Made by a program: the position numbers and the translations under genes
Assembly: GCF_021869535.1 (NCBI RefSeq)
Contig: NW_026262604.1
Location: forward strand, 4,092,001 to 4,156,000
Source of the DNA: Mytilus californianus
Taxonomy: Eukaryota
Direction: 5' to 3'
DNA length: 64,000 nucleotides
Part shown: in pieces, positions 22,544-22,926 of the stretch
Position numbering within the stretch: position 1 is the stretch's first letter
Layout: each line of letters starts with the position of its first letter
The notes under the pieces: generated by a model
The model's input: the letters and a program-made list of their open reading frames with translations, nothing else
Database searches by the model: none
Told to the model about the DNA's origin: nothing

Positions 22544-22926
22544 AAGCCTGGTACCTTTGATAACTATTTACACCACTGGGTCGATGCCACTGCTGGTGGA
22601 CGTTTCGTCCCCGTTGGTATCACCAGCCCAATTGTCAGCACTTCGGTGTTGACATGAATATCAATTATATATCATGTTTATAAATTTACGTATTAGAACA
22701 GTATGCTTTATTCGAAATACTAAGGATGTTCTTATCCCAGGCATAGATTACCTTAGCTGTATTTTCACAACTTTTTGAAAATTTGGGTCCTCAATGCTCT
22801 TCAACTTTATACTTGTTTGGCTTTTTAACTATTTTGATCTGAGCGTCACTGATGAGTCTTATGTAGACGAAACGCGCGTCTGACGTATTAAAATACAAGC
22901 CTGATACCTTTGATAACCATTTACAC
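22544..22926 (+). mobile_element. Complete retrozyme unit (353-bp monomer plus 30-bp terminal redundancy)
   Basis: Direct repeats AAGCCTG(G/A)TACCTTTGATAAC(T/C)ATTTACAC at 22544-22573 and 22897-22926 enclose one type I hammerhead. The size and organisation fit the mussel retrozymes known to give small circular RNAs. Confidence 0.85.
22843..22886 (+). ncRNA. Type I hammerhead ribozyme (intact core)
   Basis: Stem I GCGTCA/TGACGT. Core CTGATGA 22849-22855. Stem II GTCT-tatgt-AGAC. GAAA 22869-22872. Minimal stem III AC-gcgc-GT with a palindromic loop. Cleavage triplet GTC, predicted cut after 22880. Confidence 0.9.

What the first reader, a model, noticed from the sequence alone, without database searches (positions are those of the whole stretch)
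22544..22926. Complete retrozyme with an intact hammerhead, in sense orientation inside an antifungal-peptide intron
Seen: a 353-bp unit with 30-bp terminal redundancy and a type I hammerhead whose core is fully conserved (cut after 22880). It is on the same strand as the mytimycin pre-mRNA. Known: mussel retrozymes yield abundant small circular RNAs, and hammerheads with a tiny palindromic stem III cleave best as dimers. Inference: transcription of mytimycin would expose a self-cleaving site in intron 2, or one cleavable in trans by pairing with circulating retrozyme RNA. That could affect splicing of a defence gene.
Basis: partly seen in the sequence, partly recalled or inferred. Interest (0 to 1): 0.7.

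Follow-up and report, generated by a model that had tools for sequence, protein, structure and literature searches.

The report
Old single-hammerhead retrozyme copy in intron
This is one old, 5'-shortened copy of the already published mussel "retrozyme" repeat, with one intact-looking self-cutting hammerhead motif. It lies in the second intron of a mytimycin-F-like antifungal-peptide gene that is itself broken, and nothing found here suggests it is more than a passenger.

Summary
Window 22527-22926 (+) is 1.12 head-to-tail units of a 353-nt repeat. It carries a type I hammerhead at 22843-22886 with an intact core and a predicted cut after C22880. Rfam RF00163 scores it 33.8 bits, just under the 34-bit cut-off. 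It lies in sense orientation in intron 2 (20113-26564) of a mytimycin-F-like gene.

- The copy belongs to the published Mytilus retrozyme family. This genome has thousands of copies, and the scan has noted retrozymes on other DNA of this genome many times.
- It is not a complete circle-producing unit. It has one hammerhead, and its "terminal redundancy" is the overlap of a 5'-truncated 1.12-mer.
- A Mytilus edulis mytimycin F locus has the same insertion with identical junctions. There the hammerhead has lost the G10.1-C11.1 pair (22.9 bits) while the gene is intact. The hammerhead is therefore old and not conserved.
- The host gene here has TAA at codon 3.
- Two RNA runs gave no reads on exon 3 or the flanking intron. 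The retrozyme reads carry letters of other copies.

Pre-mRNA cleavage remains chemically possible but has no support. This is an ordinary finding of low interest.

The parts
22527..22926 (+). Retrozyme insert: 1.12 head-to-tail units of the 353-nt family. The 5' boundary is uncertain within 22527-22533.
   Evidence: The 41-nt satellite stops at 22526 and resumes at 22927. BLAST against family copies. M. edulis L043 has the same junctions.
22530..22573 (+). 5' partial unit (unit positions 310-353). It is the upstream arm of the 'terminal redundancy'.
   Evidence: Direct repeat D5: 44 nt, 84% identity, spacing 353.
22574..22926 (+). One full 353-nt unit, ending at the family's common 3' terminus.
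   Evidence: 26 of 30 arrays end at unit positions 343-353. The unit averages 90.8% identity to other units.
22843..22886 (+). Type I hammerhead motif. The predicted cut is between C22880 and U22881.
   Evidence: RF00163, 33.8 bits, E 1.3e-6. All 12 stem pairs are standard. It differs from the family's commonest motif by one letter, G>A at 22883, which turns a G.U pair into A-U.
22872..22879 (+). The palindrome ACGCGCGU. It forms stem III plus its loop in the monomer, and an 8-bp intermolecular helix in the predicted double hammerhead.
   Evidence: Sequence. Cofold of two copies gives -32.7 kcal/mol against 2 x -10.6.
20607..22526 (.). 41-nt satellite array into which the retrozyme inserted (left part).
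   Evidence: TRF: period 41, 46.8 copies.
22927..23065 (.). Continuation of the 41-nt satellite to the right of the insert.
   Evidence: Repeat families D2 and D3. It resumes at unit position 7, read.
19781..20112 (+). Mytimycin-F-like exon 2 (signal peptide and Cys-rich peptide). It reads ATG TCA TAA, with a stop at 19787-19789.
20113..26564 (+). Intron 2 (6452 nt, phase 2). It holds the satellite, the retrozyme and a Crypton element.
   Evidence: GT at 20113 and AG at 26563-64, with the frame kept across the junction. This is a model from the sequence. No spliced read was seen.
26565..26712 (+). Exon 3 coding part (EF-hand extension; stop at 26710-26712).

Best explanation
The stretch is an old, fixed, neutrally decaying insertion of the known Mytilus non-LTR retrozyme.

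How it arose (inferred). A reverse transcriptase supplied in trans, probably from a Penelope-like or LINE-type element, started at the family's fixed 3' site about 46 nt past the hammerhead cut. It copied a circular or multimeric retrozyme RNA for 1.12 units and stopped. This left a 5'-truncated head-to-tail copy inside a 41-nt satellite in intron 2 of a mytimycin-F-like gene. The 30-44-nt terminal redundancy is simply that overlap.

What it can do. The copy has a single hammerhead, so it cannot release a monomer or a circle. If the intron were transcribed, the motif could at most cut the pre-mRNA once, at 22880/22881.

What is shown:
- family membership and architecture
- an intact motif
- position and strand
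- shared ancestry with the M. edulis copy, and decay of the hammerhead there

What is inferred:
- the copying mechanism
- the lack of any function for the host gene
For: Family and copy number:
- 5454 first-look candidates in the own genome; the 100 scored matches reach E 1e-25 to 1e-152, most of them about 88-92% identical.
- The published mussel circRNA consensus ends in the same hammerhead, apart from one loop-2 letter. The same supplement counts 2,880 and 1,681 motifs for HHR A and HHR B (PMC7229834).

Architecture, from 30 arrays:
- 26 end at unit positions 343-353, while 5' starts are scattered across the unit.
- Array sizes run from 1.1 to 4.3 units.
- 14 arrays have a single intact motif and 16 have two or more.

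Age:
- The window unit is 90.8% identical to other units, against 93.7% among those units.
- It has 24 private differences, 1 of them in the hammerhead.
- Its own 44-nt overlap is only 84% identical.

Shared insertion in M. edulis L043:
- The junctions are identical.
- Identity is 85.6% in the retrozyme and 90-94% in the flanks; the hammerhead matches at 41 of 44 positions.
- The L043 hammerhead has C11.1>A and scores 22.9 bits.

Host gene:
- Stop at codon 3.
- 18 of 106 mytimycin variants are pseudogenes in PMC8004829.

RNA:
- Depth is 0 on exon 3 in both RNA runs, and on the intron right of the insert it is 0 in X22 and under 1 in X21.
- At the window's private positions (22614, 22615, 22631, 22633, 22778, 22781, 22883) nearly all reads show the family letter.
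- 79 reads in X22 join 22892 back to 22540. This is the tandem or circular junction of other copies.
Against: - The hammerhead motif here is fully intact, with only 1 of the unit's 24 private changes. Under a uniform rate about 3 are expected, giving P of roughly 0.2 by my own estimate. That is weak, but it points in the direction of constraint.
- Only about 6% of each of two RNA runs of unknown tissue was read. Mytimycins are expressed mainly in haemocytes after challenge (PMC8004829), so absence of reads is weak evidence.
- The TAA at codon 3 could be an allele of this one individual.
- Whether L043 is the ortholog or a paralog was not settled. Either way the insertion predates their split.
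Confidence: 0.8

Rival explanations
1. The sense-oriented intronic hammerhead cuts the mytimycin pre-mRNA during transcription, either alone or as a double hammerhead with abundant retrozyme RNA in trans. This lowers or alters splicing of a defence gene.
For: - Intact motif on the gene's strand.
- A cloned mussel repeat cuts itself at about 0.1 per min during transcription (PMC7229834).
- 3.7 kb of intron follows the cut site, so there is time before the acceptor is made (inference).
- The predicted trans double hammerhead is favoured by about 11 kcal/mol.
- Family RNA is abundant (PMC7229834).
Against: - The gene has a stop at codon 3.
- No reads on exon 3 or the flanks.
- In M. edulis the same copy has a broken G10.1-C11.1 pair while the gene stays intact, so the ribozyme is not maintained.
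- In nearest-neighbour folding the hammerhead fold is a minor state: about 1e-3 locally and 1e-9 in 400 nt of context.
- PMC7229834 notes that hammerheads in the circles seem blocked in vivo.
- From general knowledge, not tested here: cleavage inside an intron does not necessarily prevent splicing.
Confidence: 0.07
2. The copy is an active source locus. It would be transcribed on its own and would feed the pool of linear or circular retrozyme RNA.
For: Family RNA with a circle or tandem junction is present in RNA run X22 (79 reads).
Against: - One hammerhead only, so no unit-length product is possible.
- RNA reads carry the family letters, not this copy's private letters.
- It is among the more diverged copies.
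Confidence: 0.02
3. The M. edulis and window copies are independent insertions into a hotspot. In that case the age and the 'no constraint' argument would fall.
For: Retrozyme-type elements can prefer repetitive targets, and the host site is a satellite.
Against: - Both junctions are the same to the base, with the same 5' truncation point.
- At least one private difference is shared, T at 22633.
- The flanking satellite units are collinear.
Confidence: 0.02

Closest known systems
Mytilus galloprovincialis non-LTR retrozymes (Cervera & de la Pena 2020, Nucleic Acids Res., PMC7229834)
   Same: - Repeat of about 350-390 bp, low GC (0.37 here), and a type I hammerhead with a 2-bp helix III plus tetraloop.
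- The published circRNA consensus ends in the same ribozyme sequence except for one loop-2 letter, and shares the upstream block ...GGTCCTCAATGCTCTTCAACTT....
- About 5000 motifs per genome.
- The family is expressed as RNA with a unit-length back-junction.
   Different: This locus is a 1.12-unit, single-hammerhead, diverged copy. It is not a dimer or multimer able to release a monomer.
Penelope-like element insertions and their non-autonomous derivatives (Craig et al. 2021, PMC8557442)
   Same: - High degree of 5' truncation.
- Partial head-to-tail tandems that mimic terminal repeats.
- No poly(A).
- A fixed 3' end with a short stretch beyond the hammerhead.
   Different: - No RT or GIY-YIG ORF.
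- No similarity to an autonomous element's 3' end was tested here.
- No inverted 5' copy at this locus.
Conserved intronic hammerheads of amniotes (HH9/HH10; de la Pena & Garcia-Robles 2010, cited in PMC7229834)
   Same: A hammerhead in sense orientation inside an intron of a protein-coding gene.
   Different: Those are conserved across species. This one is a repeat copy whose counterpart in M. edulis has lost a core-adjacent base pair.
Newt/axolotl satellite 2 hammerheads acting as double hammerheads
   Same: A palindromic helix III/loop that can pair between two motifs.
   Different: In HHR_Amex1, the axolotl motif closest to the newt satellite 2 hammerheads, helix III has a single base pair and monomers are nearly inactive. 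The mussel motif has two pairs, and a monomeric construct cleaves (PMC7229834).

Membership tests
Hammerhead ribozyme type I (Rfam RF00163) | Conserved core: C3-U4-G5-A6-N7-G8-A9, G12-A13-A14, the A15.1-U16.1 pair, and H17 at the cut | tested here: met
   CUGAUGA at 22849-55, GAA at 22869-71, A22872-U22879, C22880.
Hammerhead ribozyme type I (Rfam RF00163) | Three helices around the core, with helix I open and helices II and III closed by loops | tested here: met
   Stem I 6 bp, stem II 4 bp, stem III 2 bp; all are standard pairs. The cmscan alignment covers the full length.
Hammerhead ribozyme type I (Rfam RF00163) | Score at or above the Rfam gathering threshold (34 bits) | tested here: not met
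   33.8 bits, 0.2 below the threshold; E 1.3e-6 locally. The shortfall is marginal. I still file it as a member, on the core, the helices and the family context.
Hammerhead ribozyme type I (Rfam RF00163) | Self-cleavage activity | not testable with these tools
   Only a related cloned mussel repeat has been assayed, at about 0.1 per min (PMC7229834).
Metazoan non-LTR retrozyme | Repeat unit of a few hundred bp with a type I hammerhead, low GC, and no LTR/PBS/PPT | tested here: met
   353-nt unit, GC 0.37. There are no long terminal repeats; the redundancy is a 44-nt unit overlap.
Metazoan non-LTR retrozyme | Tandem arrangement with at least two hammerheads, so that a monomer can be excised | tested here: not met
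   This locus has 1.12 units and one hammerhead. The feature is met by 16 of the 30 family arrays examined. The locus is therefore a truncated copy of the family, not a functional unit.
Metazoan non-LTR retrozyme | Highly self-paired monomer RNA | tested here: met
   MFE -89.2 kcal/mol, z = -3.47 against 100 shuffles.
Metazoan non-LTR retrozyme | Expressed as unit-length linear or circular RNA | tested here: inconclusive
   For the family: 79 RNA reads join 22892 to 22540, which fits a circle or a tandem. For this copy: no reads carry its private letters.
Mytimycin precursor gene | Signal peptide, Cys-rich mature peptide, dibasic site, C-terminal EF-hand extension, and three exons with a non-coding exon 1 | tested here: met
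   83% identity to P0001, which matches Mgal_F over the stretch shown. There are 14 Cys, a KRKRR site, and DEDKDGIISLEEF in exon 3. Gene structure follows PMC8004829.
Mytimycin precursor gene | Uninterrupted coding sequence | tested here: not met
   ATG TCA TAA at 19781-19789; M. edulis has TTA there.
Conserved regulatory intronic hammerhead (HH9/HH10-like) | Ribozyme conserved in orthologous introns of other species | tested here: not met
   The M. edulis copy has a G10.1.A11.1 mismatch and scores 22.9 bits. The hammerhead matches at 41 of 44 positions against 85.6% for the whole insert, which is not significantly different.

The most novel reading that the evidence does not exclude
The intact sense-strand hammerhead, possibly paired in trans with very abundant retrozyme RNA through the ACGCGCGU palindrome, cuts the intron-2 RNA of mytimycin-F-type genes at 22880/22881. 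That would couple retrozyme RNA load to the output of an antimicrobial-peptide gene in alleles where the gene is intact.
Probability: 0.05. Interest if true: 0.55.

Novelty: already known. Interest (0 to 1): 0.15.

Why it matters
It matters little as it stands. The element belongs to a published family with thousands of copies. About half of the arrays examined have a single hammerhead. Family fragments occur at about six places in this 64-kb window alone, so one lying in a 6.5-kb intron is expected.

Two small points are useful:
- The M. edulis counterpart dates the insertion to before the split of the two loci. It shows that a sense-strand retrozyme copy can sit for a long time in the intron of an intact mytimycin gene while its ribozyme decays. 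That argues against a strong effect.
- The fixed 3' end 36-46 nt past the cut, together with scattered 5' ends in 30 arrays, adds to the case that these elements are copied by target-primed reverse transcription from a defined start site. Other follow-ups of this scan reported the same for other retrozyme families of this genome.

Tried and rejected
- The Rfam scan at gathering thresholds over the whole window gave nothing. The motif misses the cut-off by 0.2 bits.
- MFE folding of the 61-nt motif does not give the hammerhead fold. This is expected, because the energy model ignores the core and tertiary contacts, so I did not use it as evidence against the motif.
- I looked for target-site duplications at the 30 arrays by eye and found none that was consistent. 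At the window copy, TACAC stands at both ends (22527-31 and 22922-26), but it is also the family's own 3' sequence. TSD, microhomology and chance cannot be told apart.
- I considered that 5' ends pile up just after the cut site (starts at unit positions 310, 313 and 315 in 3 of 30 arrays). One of these has another retrozyme fragment as its flank, and BLAST end points are imprecise, so I claim nothing.
- I looked for piles of read ends at 22880/22881 and found none listed. The loose ends at 22882 and 22841 are reads of another subfamily that shares only the hammerhead.
- I could not decide from Logan contigs whether the insert is polymorphic. No listed piece bridges the junctions.
- I did not search a joined exon 2 + exon 3 model. 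Exon 2 was searched by reference, and exon 3 was matched through P0001 in the own genome.

Full report
**What is there**

Window 22527-22926 (+) interrupts a 41-nt satellite. TRF places the satellite at 20607-22526 with 46.8 copies, and it resumes at 22927. The insert is 1.12 head-to-tail units of a 353-nt repeat: a partial unit at 22530-22573 followed by a full unit at 22574-22926.

It extends to 44 nt at 84% identity with 353-nt spacing.

Rfam's Hammerhead_1 model matches 22843-22886 over its full length. The score is 33.8 bits against a gathering score of 34, with E 1.3e-6. This explains why the default whole-window scan was blank. All core letters and all 12 stem pairs are standard, and the predicted cut follows C22880. 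Helix III has two pairs (A-U, C-G) and a GCGC loop. Together these form the palindrome ACGCGCGU.

**Which family**

The 400-nt query gave 5454 first-look candidates in the window's own 1.65-Gb genome. The 100 scored matches reach E 1e-25 to 1e-152, most of them about 88-92% identical, and many are in tandem.

Cervera & de la Pena (2020) described about 5000 type I hammerheads in M. galloprovincialis. They lie in repeats of about 350-390 bp, are expressed as abundant circular RNAs, and a cloned repeat self-cleaved co-transcriptionally at about 0.1 per min (PMC7229834). Their supplementary consensus of cloned mussel circles ends in the same ribozyme apart from one loop-2 letter. It also shares the preceding sequence block. 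The element is therefore a member of a published family. This scan has also noted retrozymes on other DNA of this genome many times: 144 notes hold the search words.

**Architecture of genomic copies**

I examined 30 arrays fetched from the genome.
- 26 end at unit positions 343-353, that is 36-46 nt past the hammerhead cut, with no poly(A).
- Their 5' starts are scattered over the whole unit.
- Sizes run from 1.1 to 4.3 units.

This is the pattern of target-primed reverse transcription from a fixed start, with variable 5' truncation. Craig et al. describe the same partial-tandem, 5'-truncated pattern for Penelope-like elements and their non-autonomous derivatives (PMC8557442). The copying of circles into tandem cDNA was already proposed in PMC7229834.

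The window copy fits this pattern as a short example. Its 'terminal redundancy' is the unit overlap, not a terminal repeat. It holds one hammerhead, as do 14 of the 30 arrays; 16 have two or more intact motifs. With a single cut site it cannot release a unit-length RNA or a circle, so 'complete retrozyme' is an overstatement.

**State and age of this copy**

The hammerhead differs from the family's commonest motif (19 of the 52 intact motifs found, the window's own included) only by G>A at 22883. That change turns a G.U pair in stem I into A-U.

The unit as a whole is more diverged than its relatives. It averages 90.8% identity to other units, against 93.7% among them and 95.9% between neighbours inside arrays. 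It has 24 private differences, 1 of them in the 44-nt hammerhead. By my own estimate that is not a significant deficit: about 3 are expected, giving P of roughly 0.2.

**A shared insertion in another mussel**

The closest database protein to exon 2 is a 158-aa M. edulis protein, P0001, at 83% identity. Over the stretch shown in the supplement of PMC8004829 it reads the same as 'Mgal_F', mytimycin F.

Its genomic locus, L043, aligns with the window through the satellite and through the whole retrozyme. Both junctions are identical and the 5' truncation point is the same. The insertion therefore happened once, before the two loci split.
- Identity is 85.6% in the retrozyme and 90-94% in the flanks.
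- The hammerhead matches at 41 of 44 positions.
- In M. edulis the hammerhead has C11.1>A. This breaks the G10.1-C11.1 pair next to the core and drops the Rfam score to 22.9 bits.
- The M. edulis gene is annotated as an intact 158-aa product.

So the ribozyme is not being maintained. An intact mytimycin gene has carried this sense-strand insert for a long time.

**The host gene here**

My gene model, from the sequence, is:

| Part | Coordinates |
|---|---|
| Exon 1 (putative, non-coding) | ends at 19328 |
| Exon 2 | 19781-20112 |
| Intron 2 | 20113-26564 |
| Exon 3 coding part | 26565-26712, with the EF-hand motif |

The layout agrees with the three-exon structure, with a non-coding exon 1, used in PMC8004829.

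Exon 2 reads ATG TCA TAA, where M. edulis has TTA. In this assembly the gene is therefore broken at codon 3, as another note of this scan also says. Pseudogenes are common in the family: 18 of 106 variants (PMC8004829).

**RNA evidence**

I laid two raw RNA-seq runs, about 6% of each read, and two DNA contig sets on 22400-26800.
- Exon 3 had zero depth in both RNA runs.
- The intron bins to the right of the insert had zero depth in X22. In X21 they had scattered reads, mostly within the Crypton span (23069-25727), and none from 25781 to the end of exon 3.
- Reads on the retrozyme were mostly only partly on it.
- At the window's private positions (22614, 22615, 22631, 22633, 22778, 22781, 22883) nearly all reads showed the family letter. 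They therefore come from other copies.
- 79 reads in X22 join 22892 back to 22540. This is the tandem or circular junction of the family.
- No pile of ends at 22880/22881 was listed.
- Loose ends at 22841 and 22882 belong to another subfamily that shares only the hammerhead. Their letters resemble the published consensus.

This is weak negative evidence. The tissue is unknown, only part of each run was read, and mytimycins are expressed mainly in haemocytes.

**Could it still cut?**

Chemically, yes. The motif is intact, and a related mussel repeat cleaves as a single motif (PMC7229834). Two copies are predicted to form a domain-swapped double hammerhead with an 8-bp ACGCGCGU helix, at -32.7 kcal/mol against 2 x -10.6.

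Against this, the hammerhead fold is a minor state in nearest-neighbour ensembles. The monomer is strongly self-paired, with z = -3.47. The authors of PMC7229834 note that hammerheads in the circles seem blocked in vivo. From general knowledge, not tested here, cleavage inside an intron does not necessarily stop splicing.

**Verdict**

The most likely account, at about 0.8, is a neutral passenger. It is an old, 5'-truncated, single-hammerhead copy of a known retrozyme family, in the intron of a mytimycin-F-like gene that is pseudogenised in this assembly.

I ran no joined-exon search.

Noticed in passing
window 23011-25769 versus L043 12555-12560: The M. edulis mytimycin F locus lacks the window's extra satellite units and the whole Crypton element (23069-25727, noted by another finding). 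It passes directly from the satellite remnant to sequence that is 97% identical to window 25770-25868. This serves as an empty site for the Crypton.
   Followed up: partly
window 19781-19822: Exon 2 reads ATG TCA TAA where M. edulis reads ATG TCA TTA. Relative to M. edulis, 12 nt (CTT GAG AGG AAA) are missing, and a 15-nt stretch (ACAGTTGACGCTTGT / ACAGTTGACGCTTCT) is duplicated. The first Cys pair, CC, reads SC.
   Followed up: partly
window 52090-52280 (-), 18033-18269 (+), 39680-39770 (-), 46286-46338 (-), 8992-9023 (-): Further fragments related to the same retrozyme unit, at 74-91% identity. One lies just upstream of the mytimycin gene. This shows how densely the family litters the region.
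   Followed up: no
family arrays L002-L030; window 22560-22573 and 22913-22926: The family's common 3' end (unit positions 343-353) lies 36-46 nt past the hammerhead cut. In the predicted monomer fold it falls in a 14-nt unpaired loop. This may be the reverse-transcription start site on the circle. It was not tested.
   Followed up: partly
window 22841-22882, RNA runs X21 and X22: Many RNA reads match only the 42-nt hammerhead and then continue into different sequence on both sides. Upstream they read ...GGCCTTTTTAACTTTTTT... and downstream ...AAATACAAAATTT..CCTGGTATC. This is a second expressed retrozyme subfamily with the same ribozyme, and it resembles the published circRNA consensus.
   Followed up: partly
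L043 11435-12076 and window 20607-22526: Both species have the 41-nt satellite in intron 2, but the array is about 0.6 kb in M. edulis and 1.9 kb here. Intron 2 is about 6.5 kb here, against about 2-4 kb in the paralogs of the own genome.
   Followed up: no
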